From: Octopus bimaculoides
Taxonomy: Eukaryota
Assembly (NCBI RefSeq): GCF_001194135.2
Contig: NC_068983.1
Location: 57,699,521-57,740,843, forward strand
Reading direction: 5' to 3'
Length of the DNA stretch: 41,323 nt
Shown one piece after another: positions 1,055 to 41,323 of this stretch (its first letter is position 1; every line of letters begins with the position of its first letter). The translations under genes and the position numbers were made by a program. A model generated the notes under the pieces. The model was given only the letters and a program-made list of their open reading frames with translations. It searched no databases and was not told the DNA's origin.

Positions 1055-1102
1055 GTACGCATATGTGCATTTACGTATGTAAATGTATGCGAATGTGTAC
1101 AA

Positions 1103-1148
<46 letters not shown>

Positions 1149-1534
1149 ATGTGTGTGTATGTGTGTATACATATATATTTATATTTATAAAGGTAATGTT
1201 TATCCCTAGAATACAAGATATGGTAAGAGAACTTCTATTGTGGTCTTTTGGTGAATATATGTACTCTTGTTTACAGCGCTAGCAGGAAACAAATCTCTGC
1301 TACTGCTAGCGCCGAGACTACATAATCACGTGATTTCAGCCTTTTCTGGCCTTGTCACTGGTAGATGCCCGGCTGTCGAACACAGAAGCAATGTCTCAGT
1401 AGTGATATACATAGACTCACAAAAGACCATACAAAAGGTTTTCTCACGGTAAACATCATAGGACTCTATGTTCCAANNNNNNNNNNGTACGCATATGTGC
1501 ATTTACGTATGTAAATGTATGCGAATGTGTACAA

Positions 1535-1908: not shown

Positions 1909-2049
1909 CACAACGTCCACTTTTAATAGGAGATACATATTACCCTTTGGTATTAATACTGGTTCTGTAGGTTCTAATTATTTTTTAGTAAATCCACTGG
2001 CTATGCGCGACACCTGTGCTTGATTGACCGATATACATCTCGTTAAACA

Positions 2050-2521
2050 TTAAGATAGGGCTTTACTTTTCTCTGATGAAAAAGCCCTGTATAGAGCAGA
2101 TACCAGAATTTATGACAAGTTGTTAGGGAATAACATCACACAAAACTATAGACAGACTTTTTAACACATATAGGATAGCATAAACAACAAAGTTAAACGG
2201 TTATCTGGCGCTTTATGTATAACTGACGAAGTGGAGTCCTTAGCTAAGAGGAATGCATATATTATCATCAAAGATCATAAACCAAACTTTGCCTCCAACC
2301 TCAAATGCTGCCTGATTAACCCAGTTAAAGCGGGAATGAGGCTGGTGAGTAAGTATATAACTGGGGAAAATAAATGGAGACCAAAGGAAGGCATCCCGTG
2401 TCTCCTTATAGCTTAATATTAATGAAGTAATTTCATGGTTTAAGCAAACAAGCTTTGAGACAGGGCAAGACTCATTCAACTCGATATAGCGGTTCTTTCC
2501 CATCTCTATCGAAAGGGTATT

Positions 2522-2577
<56 letters not shown>

Positions 2578-2995
2578 ATATAGATAGATGGATAGATAAA
2601 TATCTGTATGTGCGCGCGCGCGTGTGTGTGTGTGTGTGTGTGTGTGCATGTTTGTTTTAACTCAGTCACAGCAGTGCTCCCAAATAACGTAATCGAAAAG
2701 AAAATTTAACATCAGTTTATGCAATGGAAATTTTGAGAGACGATATATAAACCATCAGTCATCTTTTGGATACATCGACAAAGACAGAGCCACTAATATG
2801 GGTAACCATTTATGGGATTTGAAAACCAACTGCACACCACAAACGATCAAGGGAATCACCGTGGAGAAATCTACCCCATATGTAGATGAACCAAAGAGAT
2901 GTAAATTATGTATAGCTGAACAATCCCACCTTATTTTTAGATCTAAGAATTCTGCCATTCAATTCTAGATCCGAAATTTTTAGCAATTACAAGCT
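2050..2995 (+). mobile_element. Decayed, internally deleted Penelope-like element (RT N-terminus + GIY-YIG endonuclease)
   Basis: Translation: YDKLLGNNITQNYRQ...AKRNAYIIIKDHKPNFASNLKCCLINPVK...EVISWFK...RLIQLDI (PLE RT start). From 2705: LCNGNFERRYINHQSSF...HLWDLK...KRCKLCIAE...NSRSEIF (C-terminal GIY-YIG). Stops and frameshifts present; gap in the ORF at the microsatellite 2520-2650. Confidence 0.85.
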
Positions 2996-4281: not shown

Positions 4282-5123
4282 NNNNNNNNNNNNNNNNNNN
4301 NNNNNNNNNNNNNNNNNNNNNNNNNNNNNNNNNNNNNNNNNNNNNNNNNNNNNNNNNNNNNNNNNNNNNNNNNNNNNNNNNNNNNNNNNNNNNNNNNNNN
4401 NNNNNNNNNNNNNNNNNNNNNNNNNNNNNNNNNNNNNNNNNNNNNNNNNNNNNNNNNNNNNNNNNNNNNNNNNNNNNNNNNNNNNNNNNNNNNNNNNNNN
4501 NNNNNNNNNNNNNNNNNNNNNNNNNNNNNNNNNNNNNNNNNNNNNNNNNNNNNNNNNNNNNNNNNNNNNNNNNNNNNNNNNNNNNNNNNNNNNNNNNNNN
4601 NNNNNNNNNNNNNNNNNNNNNNNNNNNNNNNNNNNNNNNNNNNNNNNNNNNNNNNNNNNNNNNNNNNNNNNNNNNNNNNNNNNNNNNNNNNNNNNNNNNN
4701 NNNNNNNNNNNNNNNNNNNNNNNNNNNNNNNNNNNNNNNNNNNNNNNNNNNNNNNNNNNNNNNNNNNNNNNNNNNNNNNNNNNNNNNNNNNNNNNNNNNN
4801 NNNNNNNNNNNNNNNNNNNNNNNNNNNNNNNNNNNNNNNNNNNNNNNNNNNNNNNNNNNNNNNNNNNNNNNNNNNNNNNNNNNNNNNNNNNNNNNNNNNN
4901 NNNNNNNNNNNNNNNNNNNNNNNNNNNNNNNNNNNNNNNNNNNNNNNNNNNNNNNNNNNNNNNNNNNNNNNNNNNNNNNNNNNNNNNNNNNNNNNNNNNN
5001 NNNNNNNNNNNNNNNNNNNNNNNNNNNNNNNNNNNNNNNNNNNNNNNNNNNNNNNNNNNNNNNNNNNNNNNNNNNNNNNNNNNNNNNNNNNNNNNNNNNN
5101 NNNNNNNNNNNNNNNNNNNNNNN

Positions 5124-7722: not shown

Positions 7723-8127
7723 NNNNNNNNNNNNNNNNNNNNNNNNNNNNNNNNNNNNNNNNNNNNNNNNNNNNNNNNNNNNNNNNNNNNNNNNNNNNNN
7801 NNNNNNNNNNNNNNNNNNNNNNNNNNNNNNNNNNNNNNNNNNNNNNNNNNNNNNNNNNNNNNNNNNNNNNNNNNNNNNNNNNNNNNNNNNNNNNNNNNNN
7901 NNNNNNNNNNNNNNNNNNNNNNNNNNNNNNNNNNNNNNNNNNNNNNNNNNNNNNNNNNNNNNNNNNNNNNNNNNNNNNNNNNNNNNNNNNNNNNNNNNNN
8001 NNNNNNNNNNNNNNNNNNNNNNNNNNNNNNNNNNNNNNNNNNNNNNNNNNNNNNNNNNNNNNNNNNNNNNNNNNNNNNNNNNNNNNNNNNNNNNNNNNNN
8101 NNNNNNNNNNNNNNNNNNNNNNNNNNN

Positions 8128-8171
<44 letters not shown>

Positions 8172-8331
8172 GACGTGATTTTTTTCATTTTCCGTCTACT
8201 AAATATGCACACAAGTATTTGGTTGGCTCGGGGCTATAGTAGAAGATACTTTCCCAAGTTGCCTGGCAGTAGGACTGAACTTGGAACTATGTGTTTGGGA
8301 AGCAAATTTCTTACCACACAGCCACACCTGA
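7478..8331 (-). mobile_element. SINE family B (tRNA head, CORE-like motif, internal (TA)n, 3' module); spans gap 7723-8127
   Basis: Diverged match to the full copy at 35359-35770. Confidence 0.8.
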
Positions 8332-10372: not shown

Positions 10373-11028
10373 ATAGAACGTATCCTGCATGGCACTCTGT
10401 CTGACCCCAACAAATCTATCAATTTCTCAACTGGTTAGAAAGGATAGAAAAACATAATGCATTCAACTTATTCACTGAATTCAGATATGAAATACAAATG
10501 AAAATAAGGTTTGTGTTTTATTTTTTGGTCAATGTATATTTTTTCCATCGCACATAACCAAAAACATGACCGTGAATAATTCACCCTCAAATACAACAAT
10601 TGACTGTGATGAAAACAAATATTAAACTCAGGCAGGCTGGTAGTAGATGGAGAAAGATAATAAAGACAAGCAAATTTAATTAAACCCTTAGCCAATTAAA
10701 CAATTACTCCTCTTTGAAACGTATTTAGAATTGATTAACGCAGTTCCTTCAAACACTTGAAACAATTATATTTTTGAGGTGGTAAAACTATTTTGAAAAC
10801 TTTTCGGTCAGTTAAACTCCCGATTAGGCTTTTTGTAAGATGAATATATTACTTTCAATTTAAATACTGATAAAGAGTAATTTTAAGATCTTAAAAGTGT
10901 CATAAAAACGTCCTTTCTTATGAATGAAGCCAATTTACTGAAACATCATTTACCATTTTGTTTATGTATTATAGTATTTGGGTTAAGAAATTCCGTCGAA
11001 ATATTATATCAATGCTGTTCTATAATGT

Positions 11029-11214
11029 GGAATTATGTACATTATTTACAATGGACAGATAAGTATCATCATCTTGTTTGTTGTTATCGCAACGTTTCTG
11101 CTGATGTACTCTCCAGCCTTCATTAGGTGTTCTGGTGGAATTTCAAACCCATCCCTTTATTTGACTACTGAGATACTCTGTTCTCATTCCTAAGGTATTC
11201 TTTTTGCTGGTATT
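11029..11214 (-). mobile_element. HHR-SINE (family C) 3' part, inverted arm
   Basis: Reverse complement matches 12205-12398, including the subfamily-specific tagtcaaataaaggg segment. Confidence 0.9.
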
Positions 11215-12103
11215 ATTACTTCTGCCTTAGCGAAGGCGGAGATATTGTCTTCAGTCGTGTTTGTTTGTTTGTTTGTCTGTGGACAAGATATCTCAAGAAC
11301 TACGAGATGGATTCGGATGAAACTTCCAGGGATGTTTAACCTTGTGACTGGCACGAACCGATTAGATTTTGGGATGAATGTGGTACCAAACAAGGATTCT
11401 GCATTAGTTACTATATTTACTATACAAGATTACGATCTTACGTTGACTTTCAAGTCTTTCTCAATTATCTCCCTTCAGGCTGTTTCCAAAGTTTTATTTT
11501 CGTTTCTCTATTATTAATTTTACTCGCGTCTCTGTCTTAGTAGAAATCAAACTACATAAACAAACGGCAGCAAAACCGTTCAGAAATTAAAGAACACTAA
11601 CATATCTTTACATTATACATTACACATACACATTAACATTTTACAGTATACTTACATATATACGTACATCTATACATCGATCTAAAACAACAGGAATACT
11701 AAAGGAAGGCCAGAATTTAAGAGAAGAGAAAGCCAAAATTCTTGAGTAGAGCTTACTATTATTACCTCTGCTTTTGAAACTATTTTGAATGGTGAATTTG
11801 TAAATTTTGGTTTGTATTAGATAAGGATAAACTATTTATTACTGTTACTAAATTTTCTACAGCCATATTCATATTTCATGACTACCATTGGGACCGATCC
11901 AGCAAAAGACAAGGATTCTGGGTTATTTTCCCTGTTTCTTTTATTTCATTTTTGAGAGCGGTAGGGTTCCTTTTTAATATTCTCGTTTGTGAGAGCAGTC
12001 AAGTATATTTCAGATATTCTCATTTCAAACATCAGCTCCGGCTAATCGTCGAGAGGACATTGGTGTTGCCTTGGTGGAGGTTTGCGCCCACTGAGTGATC
12101 TTG
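11215..12103 (+). mobile_element. Helentron-associated non-autonomous element (HINE/DINE-1-like)
   Basis: 5' attacttctgcc with hairpin (tctgcctt-agcg-aaggcgga), then (GTTT)n and ggatgaaactt; 3' sub-TIR ccttggtggaggt and tgcgcccactgagtg before a T run. Confidence 0.75.
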
Positions 12104-12127
12104 TTTTTTTTTTTTCATTCAAGTCAC

Positions 12128-12398
12128 GGGCATATAGTGTAGTGGTTAAGAGCGCGGGCTACTAACTCTAAGATTCCGGGTTCAATCCCAGGCAGTGACT
12201 TGAATAAATAATAATGATAATAATAACATCAGCAAAAGATATTTAGGAATGCGAACAGAGTACCCCATTAGTCAAATAAAGGGCTGGGTTCAAAATTCCA
12301 TCAGGACACCTGATGAAGGCTGGAAAATACATCAGCCGAAACGTTGTGAAAACAACAAACAAGATGGGGACACCTATCTGTCCAATATAAATAATATT
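12128..12398 (+). mobile_element. tRNA-derived SINE family C with hammerhead-containing 3' tail
   Basis: A-box TAGTGTAGTGG 12135-12145, B-box GGGTTCAATCCC 12178-12189, (AAT)n spacer, tail shared with 4 other copies. Confidence 0.9.
12307..12348 (+). ncRNA. Minimal type I hammerhead ribozyme motif, core intact
   Basis: CAC-CTGATGA-A-GGCTG(gaaaatacat)CAGCC-GAAAC-GTT-GTG; stems I and II pair; stem III is the palindrome AACGTT. Confidence 0.75.
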
Positions 12399-14689: not shown

Positions 14690-15610
14690 TTGAAGCACAT
14701 TTTGACATTTCATTTAATGAATGACCGAATATAAATGAGCAGCGCAAAATTTGTGGCAGGGAAACAGCAACAATGTGATAACAAGCAACAAAGAGACAAG
14801 GAATGAATGAAGCTGAAAAGAGAAAAAAATCAGACAACTGAATGTACGTTGGTGAAGACAAGCACATGGGCAACTTTCCTAAGAGCAGCTAGAATGCATT
14901 GGCGTTCAAAAATGTTGATCAGTGATTTTTGTGGCACTCTGTCGGTTATGGTGTCGAGGGTTCCAATTGATCCGATCAACAGAACAGCCTGCTCGTGAAA
15001 TTAACAGGCAAATAGCTGAGCACTCCACAGACATGTGTACCCTTAATGTAGTTCTCAGGGAGATTCAGCGTGACACAGAGTGTGACAAGACTGGCCCCTT
15101 TGAAATACAGGTACAACAGAAACAGGAAGAAAGGGTGAGAGAAAGGTTTTGAGAAAGAGTACAGCAGGTTTCACTACCACCCCTGCCAGAGCTTCGTGGA
15201 GCTTTAGGTGTTTTCGCTCAATAAACACTCACAACGCTCGGTCTGGGAATCGAAACGGTAATCCTACAACCACGAGCCTGCTATCTTAACCATTGAGCCA
15301 TTGCACCTCCACACTGATCAGTATAAAGAAGTACAAAAACAACTCTCAAAAAAGAAGTGAGGATGAATTTTGGCTGAAATGCTGAGAAACGGATGCAGAT
15401 AGAACAAGTTTCTCGTGAACATCATGAACGTATCTTGAAACAAGATGCTATGCAATAAAGACGAGTATGGAAAATTCTTTGTGATGAGTAGCAAAAACTT
15501 GTGGATCATAATGTGTGACACTTTGGAGAACCACAGAAAGAACTGCGTGAATGGATGTTGATACAAAATAGTGAACAGCATTAAGCAGCAAAATAAGTTC
15601 CTAAAAAGCA
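14690..15610 (+). pseudogene. Decayed Q/E/R/K-rich ORF of unknown origin, split by a SINE
   Basis: Frame AEKRMQIEQVSREHHERILKQDAMQ*RRVWKILCDE*QKLVDHNV*...; several stops could arise from single C-to-T changes in CAA/CAG/CGA. Confidence 0.3.
14924..15314 (-). mobile_element. Full-length tRNA-derived SINE family F with 8-bp TSD
   Basis: Head gtggaggtgcaatggctcaatggttaag...gtttcgattccc; TSD tgatcagt at 14916-14923 and 15315-15322. Confidence 0.85.
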
Positions 15611-16011
15611 ATGTAAACAGATTTTATATCATGATACTAAGTAACGTCATCCAACACGCCATTGATTTTTTTTTTCAAGAACAAAGACGGCATTTAATAG
15701 CTTAGGATAAGAATTAATCGTTTAAACATACAAAGCAGGATGTTGAATGTTTCGAGACAGCATGACATAGATTCAGTAGCAGATGTCGCAATCAGTGTGA
15801 CACTTCATGCTTATGGTTTAATAGCCATCGTTGCAGCACAGTAATAAAGAACATACTCGAGGAACATTAGCCTATCCTGATTTTCGTATACGTTGTAAAT
15901 CTGTTTTAATCCGTACTCAAGAAATTCTGGATTTACCTAATGAACTACAACAGAATTGGTTCATCAGAAGCAAAATATTTCAGAACACACATCCAGATCA
16001 GTTCTATATTT

Positions 16012-16128
16012 AAGAGATGAGGAATTATGTACATTATTTACATTTGATGGATATTTGTCCCCATCTTGTTTGTTGTTAACACAACGTTTCGGCAGATATA
16101 CCCTCCAGCCTTCATTAAGTGTCTTGGG
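16012..16128 (-). mobile_element. HHR-SINE tail, inverted arm
   Basis: Reverse complement of 16332-16433; HHR core reads TTAATGA (mutated). Confidence 0.9.
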
Positions 16129-16200
16129 TATATGGCATAGTGGTTAAGAACATGGGCTACTAACCCCAAGATTCCGATTTCGATTCCAGGTAGTGACCTA

Positions 16201-16277
<77 letters not shown>

Positions 16278-16433
16278 CAACAACAACATCGAAAAATACC
16301 TTAGGAATGAGAACCCAGGTTCGAAATTTCCCCCAAGACACCTAATGAAGGCTGGAGGGTACATCAGCTGAAACGTTGTGTTAACAAACAAGATGAGGAC
16401 AAATATCCGTCAAATGTAAATAATGGAAATAAT
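16127..16433 (+). mobile_element. Full HHR-SINE family C
   Basis: A-box TGGCATAGTGG 16133-16143, B-box-like gatttcgattcc, (AAT)n/(AAC)n 16200-16287, HHR motif 16337-16382 with core CTAATGA. Confidence 0.9.
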
Positions 16434-16617
16434 ACACATCCATATGTTCAGCACAGCTATTGCCAGGTGTAGCATGAAAGCAGACGATTCTGCATTTACT
16501 CAAATTGTTGTCCCTTCCAGAATTCATTGAGTCATTCATTAGTTTGTTTTGGAGAATCAAGAAATGCTGCTACTGGTACACTACTCTGTCTGCAAAACTA
16601 CGTTTACGTTTCCGAAA

Positions 16618-16980
16618 AACATGATCGTTGCCAGCGTCGCCTTACCGGCACTTATGCCGGTGGCATGTGAAAAGCAACATTTGAGCGTGGTCCTTGCCAG
16701 TGCCACCGGACTGGCTCCCATGCAGGTAGTATGTAAAAAACAACATTTGAGAATGGTCGTTGCCAGAAACGCCTGACTGGCCCTTGTGTCGGTGGCACGT
16801 AAAAGCACCCACTACCCTCTTTGAGTGGTTGGCGTTAGGAAAGGCTTCCAGCTGTAGAAACTTTGCCAGATCAGATTGAACCTGGTGCAGCCTTCTGGCT
16901 CACCAAGTCCCCAGTCAAACCGTCCAACCCACGCCAGCATGGAAAGTAGATGTTAAACGACGATGATGATTACGACGATG
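16618..16980 (+). mobile_element. RTE-type LINE 3' UTR fragment
   Basis: ggcacgtaaaagcacc units, ggttggcgttaggaa...ccagctgtagaaac, (GAT)n end; homologous to 32200-32512. Confidence 0.85.
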
Positions 16981-17534
16981 TTCGATAACATATGTAGAGG
17001 GTGGCTGCTGACAATGGACAAGAAATACTTGAGACTCTTATTCTCTGAACACCTCTTTCAGCAATAATTCTTACCCGTCCAAGAAAAATTTGATGCAGCA
17101 ATAATACCAGAAAATGTTTCTGTAGGATTACATAACGACAAAAAGGCCAGAAGGTATAAATTTGTCTACATACAATGAGAAGACTGTATTGATTCCTTGT
17201 AATGACGAAGAAACGCATCAAACTAGAAGAACATGGTTTAGCAAGTTTCAAGCAGAGAACAATTAGGAAAATCGTCAAATATTTAGCGACTCTTATGAAG
17301 CTTATTACCCCATGATGTATTCATGTTTTGGTTTGTGTTTTATTTTCCAGTGTCTTAGATAAATAGCATCTCAATATACAAAACCAAAGAGGCAACAGCA
17401 AAGTGACATGTCTTCAATTTTATTCTTTTCTGATAATGAAGAAAGTTGAATCAGGTAATATGTTACACCACAGTCACTGTCATTTCCAATAGTTTTGTGT
17501 AGACCAATGTGCCAAAGTGTAATCTCTTATTTTA

Positions 17535-17628
17535 CATTATTTACATTTGATGGATATTTGTCCTCATCTTGTTTGCTGTTAACACAGCGTTTCGGCTGAT
17601 ATACCCTCCAGCCTTCATCAGCTGTTTC
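17535..17628 (-). mobile_element. HHR tail module (CTGATGA and stem II intact; GCT instead of GTT)
   Basis: Reverse complement: cagCTGATGAaggctggagggtatatcagccGAAACgctgtgttaac...aaatgtaaataatgta. Confidence 0.85.
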
Positions 17629-17701
<73 letters not shown>

Positions 17702-17704
<3 letters not shown>

Positions 17705-17868
17705 GGCAGGCTTCTTTCAGTTTCCGTCTACCAAATCCACTCACAAGGCTTTGGCCGGCCCGAAGCTATAGTAGAAGACACTTGCCCAAGGTGCCCCACA
17801 GTGCGAATGAACGCGGAACCATGTGGTTGGTAAGCAAGCTACTTACCACACAGCCACTCCTGCACCTA
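17702..17868 (-). mobile_element. SINE family B head
   Basis: Reverse complement: ggagtggctgtgtggtaagtagcttg...ggcaccttgggcaagtgtcttc. Confidence 0.9.
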
Positions 17869-19214: not shown

Positions 19215-19485
19215 TATATCATCGAGTGAGAGAGCCGTGCATGCCATCAAAATGACACTGGAGTAAAATATACGAAGCCCAGTACACCTATCGTGACTAC
19301 CCGTCTGATAAGGGTACACCAGGCACATGCATCACAACCATGTGTGTGCGACATGGTGATCTCCTAGCTAGATAAACAGCACATGACCTTACAGGTGGGA
19401 CCCAATTAGAATTTTCTTCAGGTTGAGTAGCCCACCCCACTCAAAAGGTCCCTGAATAAGGTTGTTTAAGGATGTTGAACGACAC
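19215..19485 (-). repeat. Interspersed repeat, possibly the 3' UTR of the adjacent R4/Dong-like LINE
   Basis: Lies directly 3' of the REL fragment on the minus strand; the assignment is inferred. Confidence 0.45.
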
Positions 19486-19486
19486 A

Positions 19487-20100
19487 CCTATGTCAATTAT
19501 CATGCATGTTCTTTCTTTTTTATTCACCACAACAATGTCTGGATTCCGATGTCTGGTCGAGTGATCGCACTGGATCATCGCATCCCACAGGATTTTGCAA
19601 TTCCCATTTTCAGTGACTGCTTCTGGAGATTTCTCATACCGTGTCTTTGTTCTTTGTAAGCCGTGATTTCCTCAGAGCTCCCAACAGATCATTCTTGCCA
19701 CATTGTCATGGCGTCTTTTGTATTCGTATTGTGCCAATATCAGGCATTTGTTAACGACGTGCCATACCATTTCACCCATCTCACTACACATTCTGCATTT
19801 ATCGCTGTCAGTAGTGCCGTCTAATCTGGACTTCATATAGTTGGTCCTTAATGCTTGTTCTTGAGCTGCACCTATGAGTGCCTCTGTCCCTATCGTCAGG
19901 TCACTCCTCTTCATCCATAACCACCAGTCCTCTGCATCTATCTTGGCATTCACATCTCTTGCAAACTGACTGTACATTTTCTTTTTCTTCCATGTTTGTC
20001 TTTGTTAGTTTCTTGTTTAAATTTTTCTTTAGTTACACAATTTTCAGTTTTGCTAACGCCTGCCTTCTTCGTGTGTTTCAACCGTGGCTCCACGTCATTT
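19487..20100 (-). mobile_element. R4/Dong-like (restriction-like endonuclease) non-LTR retrotransposon fragment
   Basis: TEALIGAAQEQALRTNY..CRMC...HVVNKC..LAQYEYKRRHDNVA..WEL* ..KILWD...PDIVVVNKKERTCMIIDI: CCHC knuckle, RHD motif and PD-(D/E)xK nuclease. Confidence 0.85.
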
Positions 20101-29282: not shown

Positions 29283-29820
29283 GCAATGACAAAAGACCGA
29301 GACCTCTGGAGATATGCTGTGACTGAGAAGACCCGGCAAATAAAGTGAGTTCACAGCTGTAACCTACACTAGTGTTGCATAACCAACCCACTCAAAAGTA
29401 TCTTGGATTGTAGGGTGACATGCTGTGCTTGAGGAGACGTATTTAGTCAAGTGCATCAGCATCAAATCAAATCACAATCAAATGGAAATTGTAGTTGTGG
29501 ATCCCGTGCCAGTGGCACGTAAAAAGCACCATCCTAATGTGGCCGATGCCAGCGCCACCTGGCTTCCATGCTGATGGCACGTAAAGAGCACCATCCGATT
29601 GTGGTCAATGCCATCCCCCTCTGGCCTCGGTGCCAGTGGCACTAAAACAAGCACCCACTACACGCTCGGAGTGGTTGGCGTTAGGAAGGGAATCCAGCTG
29701 TAGAAACACTGCCAGATCAGACTGGAGCCTGGTGCAGTCTCCTGGCTTGCCAGTCCCAAGTCAAACCATCCAACCCATGCCAGCATGGAAAACAGATTTC
29801 AAACAATGATGATGATGATG
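29283..29820 (+). mobile_element. 5'-truncated RTE LINE (ORF end + 3' UTR)
   Basis: Near-identical to 31973-32512; ends in (GAT)n. Confidence 0.9.
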
Positions 29821-31807: not shown

Positions 31808-32512
31808 GAGAGACGTTTGCATTGGTATGGTCATGTACTGCGGATGGACGAGGAGAGCTGTGTGAAGAACTGCTACTCCTAAACAGTGGAAGGAACCTGG
31901 GATAGAGAGAGACCCAGGAAAACAAGGGACGAGGTGGTGAAGCATGACCTTCGAACGTTGGGCCTCACAGAGGCAATGACAAAAGACCGAGACCCCTGGA
32001 GGTATGCTGTGACTGAGAAGACCCGGCAAATAAAGTGAGTCCACAGCTGTAACCTACACCAGTGTTGCATAACCAGTCGACTCAAAAGTACCTTGGATCG
32101 TAGGGCGACATGCTGTGCTTGAGGAGACCTACTGAGTCATGTACATCGACATCAACAGCAATATTAAAATCAAATCAAATGGAGATTGTGGTTGTGACCC
32201 GCCATGCCGGTAGCACGTAAAAAGTACCATCTGAATGTGGCTGATGCCAGTGCCGCTTTGACTGACTTCTGTGCAAGTGGCATGTAAAAAGCACCATCCG
32301 TTCGTGGTCAATGCCAGCTACTCTGGCCCCTGTGCCAGTGGCACGTAAAAAGCACCCGCTACACCCTCAGAGTGTAATGGTTGGCATTAGACAGGGCATC
32401 CAGCTGTAGAAACTGCCAGATCAGGTTGGGCCCTGGTGCAGCTCCTGGCTTCCCAGACCCCAATCGAACCGTCCAACCTATTCCAGCATGGAAAGTGGAC
32501 GATGATGATGAT
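31808..32512 (+). mobile_element. RTE-clade LINE 3' end
   Basis: ERRLHWYGHVLRMDEE..*TVEG..RERPRKTRDEVVKHDLRTLGLTEAMTKDRDPWR (stop at 32036-32038), then 3' UTR and (GAT)n. Confidence 0.9.
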
Positions 32513-35358: not shown

Positions 35359-35770
35359 TTCTTTTATTCTTTTATTCTTTTACTTGTTTCAGTCATTTGA
35401 CTGCGGCCATGCTGGAGCACCACCTTTAGTCGAATCAAATCAACCCCAGGAATTATTCTTTGTAAGCCTAGTACTTATTCTATCGTTTTGTTTTGCCGAA
35501 CCGCTAAGTTACGAGGACCTAAACACACCAGCATCAGTTGTCAAATGATGTTGGGGGTACAAACACGGATACACACCACATACACACACATACATATATA
35601 TTTACATATATACGACGGGCTTCTGTCAGTTTCCATCTACTAAATCCACTCACAAGGCTTTGGTCGGCCCGAGGCTATAGCAGAAGACACTTGCCCAAGG
35701 TGCCACGCAGTGGAACTGAACCCGGAACCATGTGGTTGGTAAGCAAGCTACTTACCACTCAGCCACTCCT
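35359..35770 (-). mobile_element. Full-length SINE family B
   Basis: tRNA-like head, GGCACCTTGGGCAAGTG CORE-like motif, internal CA/TA tract, 3' module, (AAAAGAAT)n tail. Confidence 0.9.
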
Positions 35771-36114
35771 GGATGGATGGATGGATGGATGGATGAGTAG
35801 ATCGATAGATACATACACATACACACACTCACACATACACACATACACACACACATGCACAGACACATTTTTGTTTGAATTTCATTAGGAGAGTTCAATC
35901 TGGTCGCGAACAAAGTGACCAGATTGAACTTCTCTCTCCCTCTCTCTCTCTTACACACACACTCTCTCTCTCTCTCTCTTACACACACACACACTCTCTG
36001 TCTCTCTCTTATATATATATAGAGAGAGAGAAAGAAAGGGAGAGAGAGGGAGAGATAGATAGGGAGATATACATGCATAAATATAAGTATATATATACAA
36101 ACATGCATAAGCAC

Positions 36115-39239: not shown

Positions 39240-39292
<53 letters not shown>

Positions 39293-39629
39293 NNNNNNNN
39301 NNNNNNNNNNNNNNNNNNNNNNNNNNNNNNNNNNNNNNNNNNNNNNNNNNNNNNNNNNNNNNNNNNNNNNNNNNNNNNNNNNNNNNNNNNNNNNNNNNNN
39401 NNNNNNNNNNNNNNNNNNNNNNNNNNNNNNNNNNNNNNNNNNNNNNNNNNNNNNNNNNNNNNNNNNNNNNNNNNNNNNNNNNNNNNNNNNNNNNNNNNNN
39501 NNNNNNNNNNNNNNNNNNNNNNNNNNNNNNNNNNNNNNNNNNNNNNNNNNNNNNNNNNNNNNNNNNNNNNNNNNNNNNNNNNNNNNNNNNNNNNNNNNNN
39601 NNNNNNNNNNNNNNNNNNNNNNNNNNATA

Positions 39630-40080
39630 TATATCATCATCATCATCATCAACATCATCATCATCATCATTTAACGTCCGTTGTCCATGCTGGCATGGGT
39701 TGGATGGTTTGACTGGGATGGCACTCTAGGAGGCTACACCAGAATCCAATCTGATTTGGCATGGTTTTCTATGGTGGAATACCTTTCCAAACGCCAACCA
39801 CTCCGAGAGTGTAATGGGTGCTTTTATGTGCCACCGGCACGAGTGCCATTTGCGTGACACAGGTATCTGCCACGATTGCGATTTTTATCGGTTTGATGAG
39901 TCTTCTTCTCAAGCACGACATAATGTCAAATGTTTTGGCCATTGCCTCCATGAGGCCCAACATTCGAAAGGAGCTTGGCCACCTCTATGAGGCACACCGC
40001 TTGAAAGTTACTCAGCCACCTTGCCTCCATGAGGTGCAACGCTTGAAAGGAACTCAGCCACTATGCCTCCATCAGGCCCA
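39630..40080 (-). mobile_element. RTE-type 3' UTR copy with about 39-bp tandem repeats; runs into a gap
   Basis: (ATC)n end shared with the family; gcctccatgagg...gcttgaaag units at 39945-40080. Confidence 0.8.
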
Positions 40081-40494
40081 NNNNNNNNNNNNNNNNNNNN
40101 NNNNNNNNNNNNNNNNNNNNNNNNNNNNNNNNNNNNNNNNNNNNNNNNNNNNNNNNNNNNNNNNNNNNNNNNNNNNNNNNNNNNNNNNNNNNNNNNNNNN
40201 NNNNNNNNNNNNNNNNNNNNNNNNNNNNNNNNNNNNNNNNNNNNNNNNNNNNNNNNNNNNNNNNNNNNNNNNNNNNNNNNNNNNNNNNNNNNNNNNNNNN
40301 NNNNNNNNNNNNNNNNNNNNNNNNNNNNNNNNNNNNNNNNNNNNNNNNNNNNNNNNNNNNNNNNNNNNNNNNNNNNNNNNNNNNNNNNNNNNNNNNNNNN
40401 NNNNNNNNNNNNNNNNNNNNNNNNNNNNNNNNNNNNNNNNNNNNNNNNNNNNNNNNNNNNNNNNNNNNNNNNNNNNNNNNNNTATATATATTTG

Positions 40495-40705
40495 TGTATA
40501 TGTTTGTGTGTCTGTGTTTGTCCCCCCAACATCGCTTGACAACCGATGGTGATGTTTTTACGTCCCCATAATGTAGCGGTTCGACAAAAGCGACCGATAG
40601 AGTAAGTACTAGGCTTACAAAGAATAAGTCCTGGGGTCGATTTGCTTGACTAACGGCGGTGCTCCAGCATGGTTGCAGCCAAATGACTGAAACAAGTAAA
40701 ACAGT
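40495..40705 (+). mobile_element. SINE family B 3' module
   Basis: Matches the reverse complement of 35370-35570. Confidence 0.9.
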
Positions 40706-41059: not shown

Positions 41060-41323
41060 CAGGGAGCCTCTTACTATATGTGGCACTTGGTGAAGAATGG
41101 AGTTTGATTTAGCAACCCTCATTTGCACCTCCTGCCGCGAGGTAGGTTCATCTGGGACTCTCGATAGGAAGAGGTCCAGCTTTGATTTAAAAACTCCTAC
41201 ATCTACTTTGTGCAGGTTCCTCAGGTTCTTCGGGAGAATATTAAAAAGCTGTGGGCCCCTGAATCCCAAGCTGTTGCAGTAACTGGTCCTGAAGCGCGAT
41301 GGCATTGCTGGGATCTTTGACAC
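41060..41323 (-). mobile_element. CR1/L2-group LINE ORF2 C-terminus (cut by the window end)
   Basis: NSLGFRGPQLFNILPKNLRNL...VFKSKLDLFLSRVPDEP. Confidence 0.8.

What the first reader, a model, noticed from the sequence alone, without database searches (positions are those of the whole stretch)
12128..12398. tRNA-headed SINE carrying a minimal type I hammerhead ribozyme in its 3' tail
Seen: Pol III A/B boxes, an (AAT)n spacer, then CAC-CUGAUGA-A-[GGCUG..CAGCC]-GAAAC-GUU-GUG with all core nucleotides present. In other copies stem I extends to GACAC/GUGUU. Stem III has no loop but is the palindrome AACGUU. Established: loopless, palindromic stem III hammerheads occur in Penelope-like elements and cleave as dimers, and an extra A between A9 and G10.1 is a known natural variant (CChMVd). 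Inference: a Pol III SINE that borrowed a Penelope-type ribozyme tail instead of a LINE tail, able to trim its own RNA 3' end at GUU. I do not know of this being described for this family.
Basis: partly seen in the sequence, partly recalled or inferred. Interest (0 to 1): 0.9.

Follow-up and report, generated by a model that had tools for sequence, protein, structure and literature searches.

The report
SINE with a Penelope-type hammerhead tail
This is a short mobile-DNA element of an animal genome whose tail carries a minimal hammerhead ribozyme motif of the kind found in Penelope-like retrotransposons, but the copies here suggest the motif is an inherited passenger rather than a working self-trimmer.

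Summary
The sequence is as described. At 12128-12398 a Pol III A/B-box head, an (AAT)n run and a body precede a complete minimal type I hammerhead (12305-12350, predicted cleavage after 12345).

The window holds five copies of this tail, all between 11.0 and 17.6 kb. Two of them, A and D, share the whole head-spacer-body-tail layout, so it is a real SINE family. The motif has the traits published for Penelope-like-element (PLE) minimal hammerheads. It is far beyond chance: 1 hit in 67 Mb of random sequence.

Only copy A has an intact core. B, C and D carry G5A and E carries U16.1C. The hammerhead block is no better conserved than the tail after it (85% against 87%), and there is no covariation.

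All five copies keep about 50 conserved bases beyond the cleavage site. C and D appear to be one insertion event and both carry G5A. So uncleaved RNA, probably with a dead core, was what got copied.

Copy C is an inverted, 5'-truncated tail that abuts the head of D inside one candidate target-site duplication. This is a published PLE insertion hallmark.

Best reading: a SINE that uses PLE machinery, with the ribozyme as an inherited module. Self-trimming is not supported. I could obtain no genome-wide copies and no partner element.

The parts
12128..12200 (+). Copy A: Pol III head (A box 12135-12145, B box 12179-12189); tRNA ancestry inferred, not detected
   Evidence: box pair, 0.02 expected by chance; no tRNA call at normal thresholds
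12207..12226 (+). Copy A: (AAT)n spacer (24.7 units in copy D, 16201-16274)
12228..12304 (+). Copy A: body, shared with copy B and in part with D
12305..12350 (+). Copy A: minimal type I hammerhead, all core positions intact. Helix I 3 bp, helix II 5-6 bp, no helix III loop, predicted cleavage after 12345
12346..12398 (+). Copy A: tail beyond the cleavage site, 87% mean pairwise identity among the five copies; homology ends near TAAATAAT (12388-12395)
12098..12127 (-). Vestige of an inverted tail copy abutting the head of A. Also forms an 11-bp perfect inverted repeat with 12196-12206
11017..11222 (-). Copy B: (AAT) remnant, body, tail and a 3' extension; no head. Hammerhead 11131-11086 with G5A and C11.1A
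15996..16128 (-). Copy C: inverted, 5'-truncated tail starting just upstream of helix I and abutting the head of D. Hammerhead 16123-16078 with C3U, G5A and a helix II mismatch. About 24-27 nt 3' extension
16126..16433 (+). Copy D: full-length (head, (AAT)n/(AAC)n, shortened body, tail). Hammerhead 16337-16382 with G5A and C11.1U; helix I 5 bp
15987..15995 (.). Left copy of the candidate target-site duplication ACACATCCA around the C+D unit (13/15 over 15984-15998)
16434..16442 (.). Right copy of the candidate target-site duplication (13/15 over 16431-16445)
17531..17628 (-). Copy E: 5'-truncated tail starting at helix I, directly after a (TA)37 run (17630-17703) that follows another SINE head. 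Hammerhead 17626-17581 with the core boxes intact but U16.1C, which breaks the palindrome

Best explanation
**What it is.** This is a Pol III-type SINE family of about 270-310 bp. It has an A/B-box head of eroded tRNA ancestry, an (AAT)n run, a body, and a 3' module of about 100 nt.

**The 3' module.** It contains a Penelope-type minimal type I hammerhead followed by about 50 conserved bases, and it ends in a 9-nt unit repeated about twice.

**How it most likely works.**
- Pol III transcribes the element from its internal promoter through to the first T-run in the flank.
- The 3' module is the handle by which the reverse transcriptase/GIY-YIG endonuclease of a Penelope-like element (PLE) copies this RNA in trans. 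That leaves PLE-style insertion scars.
- The hammerhead came along with that module. Catalytic activity is not needed for spread. The RNA that is copied is uncleaved, and at least one source lineage already carried the inactivating G5A change.
- With a loopless 4-bp helix III, any cleavage would need two RNAs to pair. It would be inefficient and would yield a dead-end RNA lacking the tail.

**Shown:** the anatomy, the family, the decay pattern and the insertion structure.
**Inferred:** the Pol III transcription, the PLE partner, and the lack of a role for cleavage.
For: 1. **Motif.** The full minimal-hammerhead descriptor is met in copy A at a chance rate of about 1.5e-8 per base. Traits outside the descriptor match those published for PLE minimal hammerheads: a base between A9 and G10.1 in 5 of 5 copies, G10.1-C11.1, a palindromic 15.2/16.2 pair without a loop, and a long helix II.
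2. **Composite family.** A and D share head, spacer, body and tail with unrelated flanks. B, C and E are 5'-truncated at different points.
3. **PLE-style insertion.**
   - C is inverted and 5'-truncated, abuts the 5' end of D, and has its own 3' end pointing outward. Arms are 65 nt at 88% and 51 nt at 92% complementarity.
   - One candidate duplication flanks the unit: 9/9 exact, 13/15 extended. Only 0.85% of random flank pairs in this window do as well.
   - A 3' extension is shared by B and C but absent from D.
   - E lies at (TA)37.
   - All five copies cluster within 6.6 kb.
   - PMC8557442 lists the first four features as PLE hallmarks. PMC4209133 noted paired minimal hammerheads 100-700 bp apart on opposite strands. 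PMC6765202 notes insertion next to earlier copies.
4. **No need for cleavage.** All five copies keep the tail beyond the site at 87% identity. G5A is present in both C and D, and also in B.
5. **No poly(A).** The tail also shows no match to the 3' ends of the two LINE fragments in the window.
6. **PLEs in this genome.** A PLE-like ORF remnant lies in the same window.
Against: - No PLE with a matching 3' end was found. The PLE-like remnant at 2030-2968 has no hammerhead and no tail similarity downstream.
- Only five copies, and about four independent events, could be studied. No more could be fetched.
- The family consensus at position 5 is therefore unknown.
- The short tandem repeat at the 3' end is, from my own knowledge, also typical of tails recognised by stringent LINEs. 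A LINE partner is not excluded.
- The inverted-copy evidence rests on one clear case (C+D) and one vestige (upstream of A). The same junction in both cases is itself unexplained.
- The candidate duplication's first bases resemble the start of the B/C extension, which weakens it somewhat.
- Pol III transcription is inferred from consensus boxes only.
Confidence: 0.5

Rival explanations
1. The hammerhead is active, as a dimer through AACGUU, and trims the SINE RNA at GUU as a working step of the element's life cycle.
For: - Copy A has every core position.
- C and D have a 5-bp helix I.
- PLE minimal hammerheads do cleave weakly as dimers in vitro.
- Genomic SINE copies decay neutrally, so dead cores in old copies do not by themselves disprove an active master copy.
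Against: - All five copies retain about 50 conserved bases 3' of the site, so cleaved RNA was not the template.
- G5A is shared by C and D, which appear to come from one event, and is also in B.
- The core block is no better conserved than the tail (85.0% against 87.0%).
- There are no compensatory changes.
- The copies are dispersed singly and not in tandem. Helix III would need a 4-bp pairing between two separate RNAs.
- In copy A the predicted fold ties up the core in a 7-bp hairpin.
Confidence: 0.12
2. An ordinary LINE-dependent SINE. The tail is copied from a LINE 3' end (stem-loop plus short terminal repeats), and the hammerhead likeness is either chance or a ribozyme borne by that LINE.
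For: - The 3' end is a 9-nt unit repeated 2.1-2.3 times, and a stable hairpin sits about 65 nt from the end. From my own knowledge this layout is known for stringent LINE/SINE pairs.
- Position 5 is A in 3 of 5 copies.
- No Rfam hit.
- Ribozymes in some LINEs and SINEs are reported.
Against: - The chance rate of the full descriptor is about 1.5e-8 per base, and the extra PLE-type traits are present.
- A head-to-head unit with two outward 3' ends duplicates the same tail region. Twin priming on a single RNA does not produce that.
- No similarity to the 3' ends of the two LINE fragments in the window.
Confidence: 0.2
3. A MITE-like DNA transposon. The C+D unit has terminal inverted repeats of about 100 nt and a 9-bp target duplication (Mutator-like), and the single tails are broken copies.
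For: - Inverted arms at 88-92% complementarity flank an internal region, with a 9-bp direct repeat outside them.
- Both full-length copies carry an inverted tail piece at the same junction.
Against: - The ends are not symmetrical. A 24-27 nt extension is present on the C side only, yet the direct repeat abuts both ends.
- B and E start at different internal points, as retroposed 5'-truncated copies do.
- The internal part carries oriented Pol III boxes.
Confidence: 0.07
4. Not a composite element. The tails are lone truncated PLE ends that landed next to unrelated tRNA-like SINE heads.
For: B, C and E lack the head. E follows a different SINE head across a (TA)n run. PMC4209133 read most lone minimal hammerheads as truncated PLEs.
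Against: A and D share the same head (80% over 80 nt), the same (AAT)n position, the same body start and the same tail, at loci with unrelated flanks.
Confidence: 0.05

Closest known systems
Minimal hammerheads of Penelope-like elements (Cervera & de la Pena 2014, PMC4209133; Lunse et al. 2017 as summarised in PMC6765202)
   Same: Type I layout, no helix III loop, palindromic 15.2/16.2, one unpaired base between A9 and G10.1, G10.1-C11.1, long helix II and short helix I. Many lone genomic copies. Pairs occur on opposite strands a few hundred bp apart. They are expected to act only as dimers and weakly.
   Different: Here the motif sits behind a Pol III A/B-box head in a ~300-bp element, not in the pseudo-LTR of an RT-encoding element. 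No PLE with this tail was available to compare.
Sm-alpha / Sj-alpha SINE-like elements of schistosomes (Ferbeyre et al. 1998; Laha et al. 2000; PMC2770079, PMC6765202)
   Same: A short non-autonomous element with a tRNA-derived Pol III promoter part plus a hammerhead.
   Different: Those carry canonical, efficient hammerheads, often sit in tandem arrays and are cut into units. Here the hammerhead is the minimal loopless type, the copies are dispersed singly, and the copied RNA was uncleaved.
Animal non-LTR retrozymes (PMC7229834; bioRxiv 10.64898/2026.07.22.740005)
   Same: Non-autonomous, hammerhead-bearing, and proposed to depend on PLE machinery.
   Different: Retrozymes are tandem 170-400-nt units that give circular RNAs after double cleavage and have no Pol III head. 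No tandem copies are seen here.
Classical tRNA-SINE with a LINE-derived 3' tail
   Same: Head-body-tail build, 5' truncation, and short repeats at the 3' end.
   Different: The tail carries a PLE-type ribozyme motif. One insertion unit has an inverted second copy of the tail with its own 3' end pointing outward.
Hammerheads with an extra A after A9 (CChMVd; De la Pena & Flores 2001, cited in PMC4209133)
   Same: An unpaired base at the 5' end of helix II.
   Different: That is a viroid type III ribozyme. The link is only that this variant is tolerated.

Membership tests
Hammerhead ribozyme, PLE minimal type I | Core C3 U4 G5 A6 N7 G8 A9 ... G12 A13 A14, A15.1-U16.1, H17 | tested here: met
   Met in copy A only. 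B, C and D have G5A (C also C3U) and E has U16.1C.
Hammerhead ribozyme, PLE minimal type I | One unpaired base between A9 and G10.1; G10.1-C11.1 closing pair | tested here: met
   Bulged A in 5 of 5 copies. G-C in A, C and E; G-U in D; broken in B. Trait list from PMC4209133.
Hammerhead ribozyme, PLE minimal type I | No helix III loop; palindromic 15.2/16.2 that allows a dimer | tested here: met
   ACGU in 4 of 5 copies, ACGC in E.
Hammerhead ribozyme, PLE minimal type I | Helices I and II supported by compensatory changes across copies | tested here: inconclusive
   86% of cells are paired, against 17-56% in the slid controls. There are 0 double changes among 5 sequences.
Hammerhead ribozyme, PLE minimal type I | Core better conserved than neighbouring sequence | tested here: not met
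   85.0% against 87.0% mean pairwise identity; 14 of 46 against 11 of 45 variable columns. n = 5 decaying copies, so this is weak.
Hammerhead ribozyme, PLE minimal type I | Match to the curated Rfam hammerhead models | tested here: not met
   No hit at the gathering score or at E <= 10. I think the missing helix III hairpin explains this, but I did not inspect the models.
Hammerhead ribozyme, PLE minimal type I | Site-specific self-cleavage | not testable with these tools
   Needs in vitro transcription and end mapping.
Hammerhead ribozyme, PLE minimal type I | Lies in, or matches, the pseudo-LTR/3' end of a PLE of the same genome | not testable with these tools
   The host genome could not be reached. 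The PLE-like remnant in the window shows no match.
SINE (tRNA-related, Pol III) | Internal A and B boxes at tRNA-like spacing | tested here: met
   Copy A: one mismatch in each box, 33 nt apart, against 0.02 expected. By eye, D's A box fits the consensus fully and its B box has two mismatches.
SINE (tRNA-related, Pol III) | Head recognisable as a tRNA | tested here: not met
   ARAGORN gives a call only at a 70% threshold and with no sensible anticodon. Rfam's models give nothing on a 98-nt search.
SINE (tRNA-related, Pol III) | Dispersed copies with the same head-body-tail build and 5'-truncated relatives | tested here: met
   A and D are full-length; B, C and E are truncated.
SINE (tRNA-related, Pol III) | Target-site duplications | tested here: inconclusive
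   There is a candidate for the C+D unit. None was found for A, B or E.
PLE-mediated insertion | Inverted 5'-truncated copy abutting the 5' end; 30-40-bp extension at one end; microsatellite targets; 5' truncation (PMC8557442) | tested here: met
   C+D unit, a vestige upstream of A, a 24-27 nt extension on B and C only, and E at (TA)37. Few events.
Animal non-LTR retrozyme | Tandem head-to-tail units, each with a hammerhead | tested here: not met
   No tandem copies of the tail.
Sm-alpha-like SINE | Canonical hammerhead with a closed helix III and loop-loop contacts | tested here: not met
   Helix III has no loop. No Rfam hammerhead match.

The most novel reading that the evidence does not exclude
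This would be the first documented Pol III (tRNA-type) SINE family that parasitises Penelope-like elements instead of LINEs. The minimal hammerhead would then serve not as a cutter but as the recognition or dimerisation handle. Its ACGU palindrome would pair the SINE RNA with a PLE RNA and so bring it to the PLE reverse transcriptase. That would also give a use for the weakly active PLE hammerheads.
Probability: 0.3. Interest if true: 0.65.

Novelty: new variant of a known kind. Interest (0 to 1): 0.45.

Why it matters
SINEs are textbook parasites of LINEs. A SINE built on a Penelope-type 3' module would show that PLE machinery can be hijacked by Pol III transcripts.

It would also give a small, abundant natural reporter for two open questions about PLEs. 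The first is what their reverse transcriptase recognises. The second is what their barely active minimal hammerheads are for.

The copies here already hint at an answer to the second question: retroposition did not need cleavage, and probably did not need an intact core. It could also mean that part of the thousands of lone minimal hammerheads counted in animal genomes are SINE tails rather than truncated PLEs.

Tried and rejected
- **Rfam.** Gathering thresholds on the whole window and E <= 10 on 401 nt and 98 nt gave no hammerhead and no tRNA, only chance miRNA-like hits.
- **ARAGORN.** Nothing at normal thresholds.
- **More copies by DNA pattern.** The metagenome scan gave two chance bacterial hits. 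The viral and prokaryote-genome scans gave none.
- **More copies through proteins.**
  - A 54-aa spurious ORF across the SINE found nothing.
  - The PLE-like ORF pieces found nothing with the word-indexed search.
  - The LINE ORF found only relatives at 54% identity or less; the few named hits are from a sponge and a coral.
  - One fetched 20.8-kb locus held no tail and no hammerhead.
  - The host species therefore seems absent from the collections.
- **Literature.** Literal sequence strings gave nothing relevant. No paper on a cephalopod SINE with a hammerhead, or on a SINE mobilised by PLEs, turned up.
- **Thermodynamic folding.** Minimum-energy folds of monomer and dimer do not reproduce the catalytic fold. 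They cannot model the core, so I gave them no weight beyond the competing hairpin in copy A.
- **Twin priming.** Rejected as the origin of C+D, because the inverted part duplicates the tail instead of continuing the sequence upstream.
- **Target duplications.** None convincing for A, B or E.
- **Pfam.** No hit on the PLE-like pieces or on their database relatives.

Full report
**Setting.** The window is an animal-type draft assembly. It is 36% G+C, has 2,228 Ns sitting in (AT)n runs, and is crowded with microsatellites and tRNA-like SINEs. From memory of its commonest SINE I suspect an octopus. I could not verify this, and nothing below depends on it.

**Observation.**
- Head: A box TAGTGTAGTGG at 12135 and B box GGTTCAATCCC at 12179, 33 nt apart. 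With at most one mismatch per box, such pairs occur twice in the window against 0.02 expected in shuffles.
- Spacer: (AAT)n at 12207-12226, followed by a body.
- Hammerhead at 12305-12350: GACAC CUGAUGA A GGCUG (10-nt loop) CAGCC GAAA CGUU, then GUG, with the scissile bond after 12345.
- A descriptor was written to demand helix I of at least 3 bp, CUGANGA, 0-1 bulged base, helix II of at least 4 bp, GAAA, a Watson-Crick 15.2/16.2 pair, U16.1 and H17.
- That descriptor hits only this site in the window. It gave no hit in 300 dinucleotide shuffles and one hit in 67 Mb of first-order Markov sequence.
- The head is not recognised as a tRNA by ARAGORN or by Rfam's models, even on a 98-nt search. 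No Rfam hammerhead model matches. I think the missing helix III hairpin explains the latter, but I did not inspect the models.

**The family.** BLAST and a profile search find five copies of the tail and no more. All lie between 11.0 and 17.6 kb.

| Copy | Position (strand) | Extent | Hammerhead state |
|---|---|---|---|
| A | 12128-12398 (+) | full-length | all core positions intact; helix I 3 bp |
| B | 11222-11017 (-) | starts in the (AAT) remnant; no head | G5A, C11.1A |
| C | 16128-15996 (-) | starts just upstream of helix I | C3U, G5A, one helix II mismatch |
| D | 16126-16433 (+) | full-length | G5A, C11.1U; helix I 5 bp |
| E | 17628-17531 (-) | starts at helix I, right after (TA)37 that follows a different SINE head | core boxes intact; U16.1C breaks the palindrome |

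A and D share the same head (80% over 80 nt), the same (AAT)n position, the same body start and the same tail, with unrelated flanks. So a composite SINE exists, and it has 5'-truncated relatives.

**State of the ribozyme in the copies.**
- Only A has every core position.
- Helix II's 5' strand never varies. Its 3' strand is hit at three different places without compensation. There are no double changes in either helix.
- Mean pairwise identity is 85.0% in the 46-column hammerhead block and 87.0% in the 45 columns after the cleavage site.
- With five decaying copies this says little about the master sequences.
- In copy A the bases CAUCAGG just upstream pair with CCUGAUG of the core in the predicted fold. 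The other copies lack this hairpin.

**What kind of hammerhead.** Cervera and de la Pena defined minimal hammerheads in the pseudo-LTRs of Penelope-like elements. They listed traits that their search did not demand but that kept turning up:
- a base between positions 9 and 10.1;
- the G10.1-C11.1 pair;
- palindromic 15.2/16.2 with little or no loop 3;
- a longer helix II and a shorter helix I;
- action as dimers with low activity in vitro;
- thousands of lone copies per genome, and some pairs 100-700 bp apart on opposite strands (PMC4209133; also PMC6765202).

The motif here has all of these sequence traits (helix II can reach 6 bp). C and D are such an opposite-strand pair, about 210 bp apart.

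**Insertion anatomy.**
- C is an inverted copy of the tail with its own 3' end pointing outward, and it abuts the first bases of D's head. Inverted arms are 65 nt at 88% and 51 nt at 92% complementarity.
- The unit C+D is flanked by the direct repeat ACACATCCA (15987-95 and 16434-42). Extended, it matches 13 of 15. Only 0.85% of random flank pairs from this repeat-rich window do as well.
- C and B share a further 24-32 nt beyond the point where D ends (alignment score 33 against a null maximum of 23).
- Craig et al. describe these features for PLEs: strong 5' truncation, an inverted 5'-truncated copy immediately at the 5' end, a 30-40-bp extension at only one end, and a bias for microsatellites (PMC8557442). 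PLEs also tend to land beside earlier copies (PMC6765202), which fits the clustering.
- Twin priming on one RNA does not explain C+D, because C duplicates the tail of D rather than continuing upstream of it.
- Upstream of A there is a vestige of the same arrangement. The reverse complement of 12098-12127 reads like the start of the hammerhead joined to AACAAACAAGAT of the tail. It also forms an 11-bp perfect inverted repeat with 12196-12206.
- That both full-length copies carry the inverted piece at the same junction is unexplained. Two ideas are microhomology between the 5'-GGG of the head and the C-run upstream of the hammerhead, or a unit that itself carries inverted ends.

**What this says about function.**
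- All five copies retain about 50 conserved bases beyond the GUU site. The RNA that was reverse-transcribed was therefore uncleaved. A trimmed RNA would give progeny without helix I's 3' strand and without the 3' end.
- If C and D came from one event, as the shared flanking repeat suggests, their shared A at position 5 was already in the template RNA.
- Helix III would be four intermolecular base pairs between separately transcribed RNAs, since no tandem copies exist.
- I therefore read the hammerhead as part of a borrowed 3' module, not as a working trimmer.

**Partner.**
- I could not reach the host genome. DNA pattern scans of the metagenome, viral and prokaryote collections gave only chance hits or none.
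- Protein routes failed too. The best relatives of a young LINE fragment are only 54% identical, and the few named hits are from a sponge and a coral.
- The window does hold a PLE-like ORF remnant at 2030-2968. Its relatives carry the CxC..C and IY...YIG...C.LC..EK pattern, which I recognise as the PLE endonuclease. It has 506 hits at E <= 1e-3, the best at 1.5e-13, but Pfam gives nothing.
- That remnant shows no hammerhead and no tail similarity.
- The tail is also unlike the 3' ends of the two LINE fragments present.
- The 9-nt unit repeated about twice at the 3' terminus is a feature I also know from tails of stringent LINEs. A LINE partner therefore stays a live rival.

**Known relatives and novelty.**
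- SINE-like elements with hammerheads are known. Sm-alpha and Sj-alpha of schistosomes are tRNA-derived, transcribed by Pol III and carry canonical hammerheads, often in tandem (PMC2770079, PMC6765202).
- Non-autonomous hammerhead elements tied to PLEs are known as animal retrozymes. These are tandem, yield circular RNA and have no Pol III head (PMC7229834; bioRxiv 10.64898/2026.07.22.740005).
- I found no report of a dispersed Pol III SINE with a PLE-type minimal hammerhead tail and PLE-type insertion scars. Repbase and Dfam could not be consulted.
- I rate it a new variant of a known kind.

**Verdict.**
- Best explanation (0.5): a PLE-dependent SINE with a passenger hammerhead.
- Rivals: a LINE-dependent SINE with a chance or LINE-borne motif (0.2); a working self-trimming ribozyme (0.12); a MITE-like element (0.07); lone PLE ends beside unrelated heads (0.05).
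- Interest: 0.45.

Noticed in passing
window 2030-2968 (+): One reading frame with many stops holds pieces that look like a Penelope-like element ORF: ..IIIKDHKPNF..CCLINP.. and a GIY-YIG/CCHH-type endonuclease end. It is interrupted by (TA)n/(GATA)n/(TG)n at 2500-2660. It has 506 database relatives at E <= 1e-3, but Pfam recognises none of those tested.
   Followed up: partly
window 19444-20004 (-): LINE reverse-transcriptase C-terminus with a single in-frame stop and a weak zf-RVT match. The best database relatives are only 54% identical; the few named hits are from a sponge and a coral. The host species therefore seems absent from the protein collection.
   Followed up: partly
window 41060-41323 (-): An ORF that, from my memory of such sequences, resembles the C-terminal end of a LINE ORF2 (..FKSKLDLFLSRVPDEP..). 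It runs off the window end.
   Followed up: no
window 17671-17862 (-), 35580-35771, 8139-8330: A second, unrelated tRNA-like SINE family. ARAGORN at an 80% threshold calls the head tRNA-Ser(gct)-like. One copy is followed by (TA)37 and then hammerhead tail E.
   Followed up: partly
window 15256-15310 (-): Another A-box/B-box pair at tRNA spacing (TGGCTCAATGG ... GTTTCGATTCC), probably a further SINE head.
   Followed up: no
window 12117-12127 and 12196-12206: An 11-bp perfect inverted repeat (ATTCAAGTCAC / GTGACTTGAAT; 20 nt at 85%) brackets the head of copy A. The same junction sequence precedes the head of copy D, where it belongs to inverted copy C.
   Followed up: partly
window 12299-12315: In copy A only, CAUCAGG pairs with CCUGAUG of the hammerhead core in the predicted fold. 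This 7-bp hairpin would compete with the catalytic fold.
   Followed up: yes
window 1055-1354 and 1487-1786: An exact 300-nt duplicate spaced 432 nt apart. It may be an assembly artefact.
   Followed up: no
window 16621-16804; 29504-29618; 32202-32382: A 66-nt unit repeated 2.8 times, with relatives elsewhere in the window (..GTGGCACGTAAAAAGCACC..). This is another repeat family of unknown kind.
   Followed up: no
window 4700-5120, 7730-8130, 39250-39630, 40080-40500 (approximate): The N gaps I looked at are bordered by (AT)n runs, so the assembly seems to break at microsatellites. These runs dominate the repeat-finder output.
   Followed up: no
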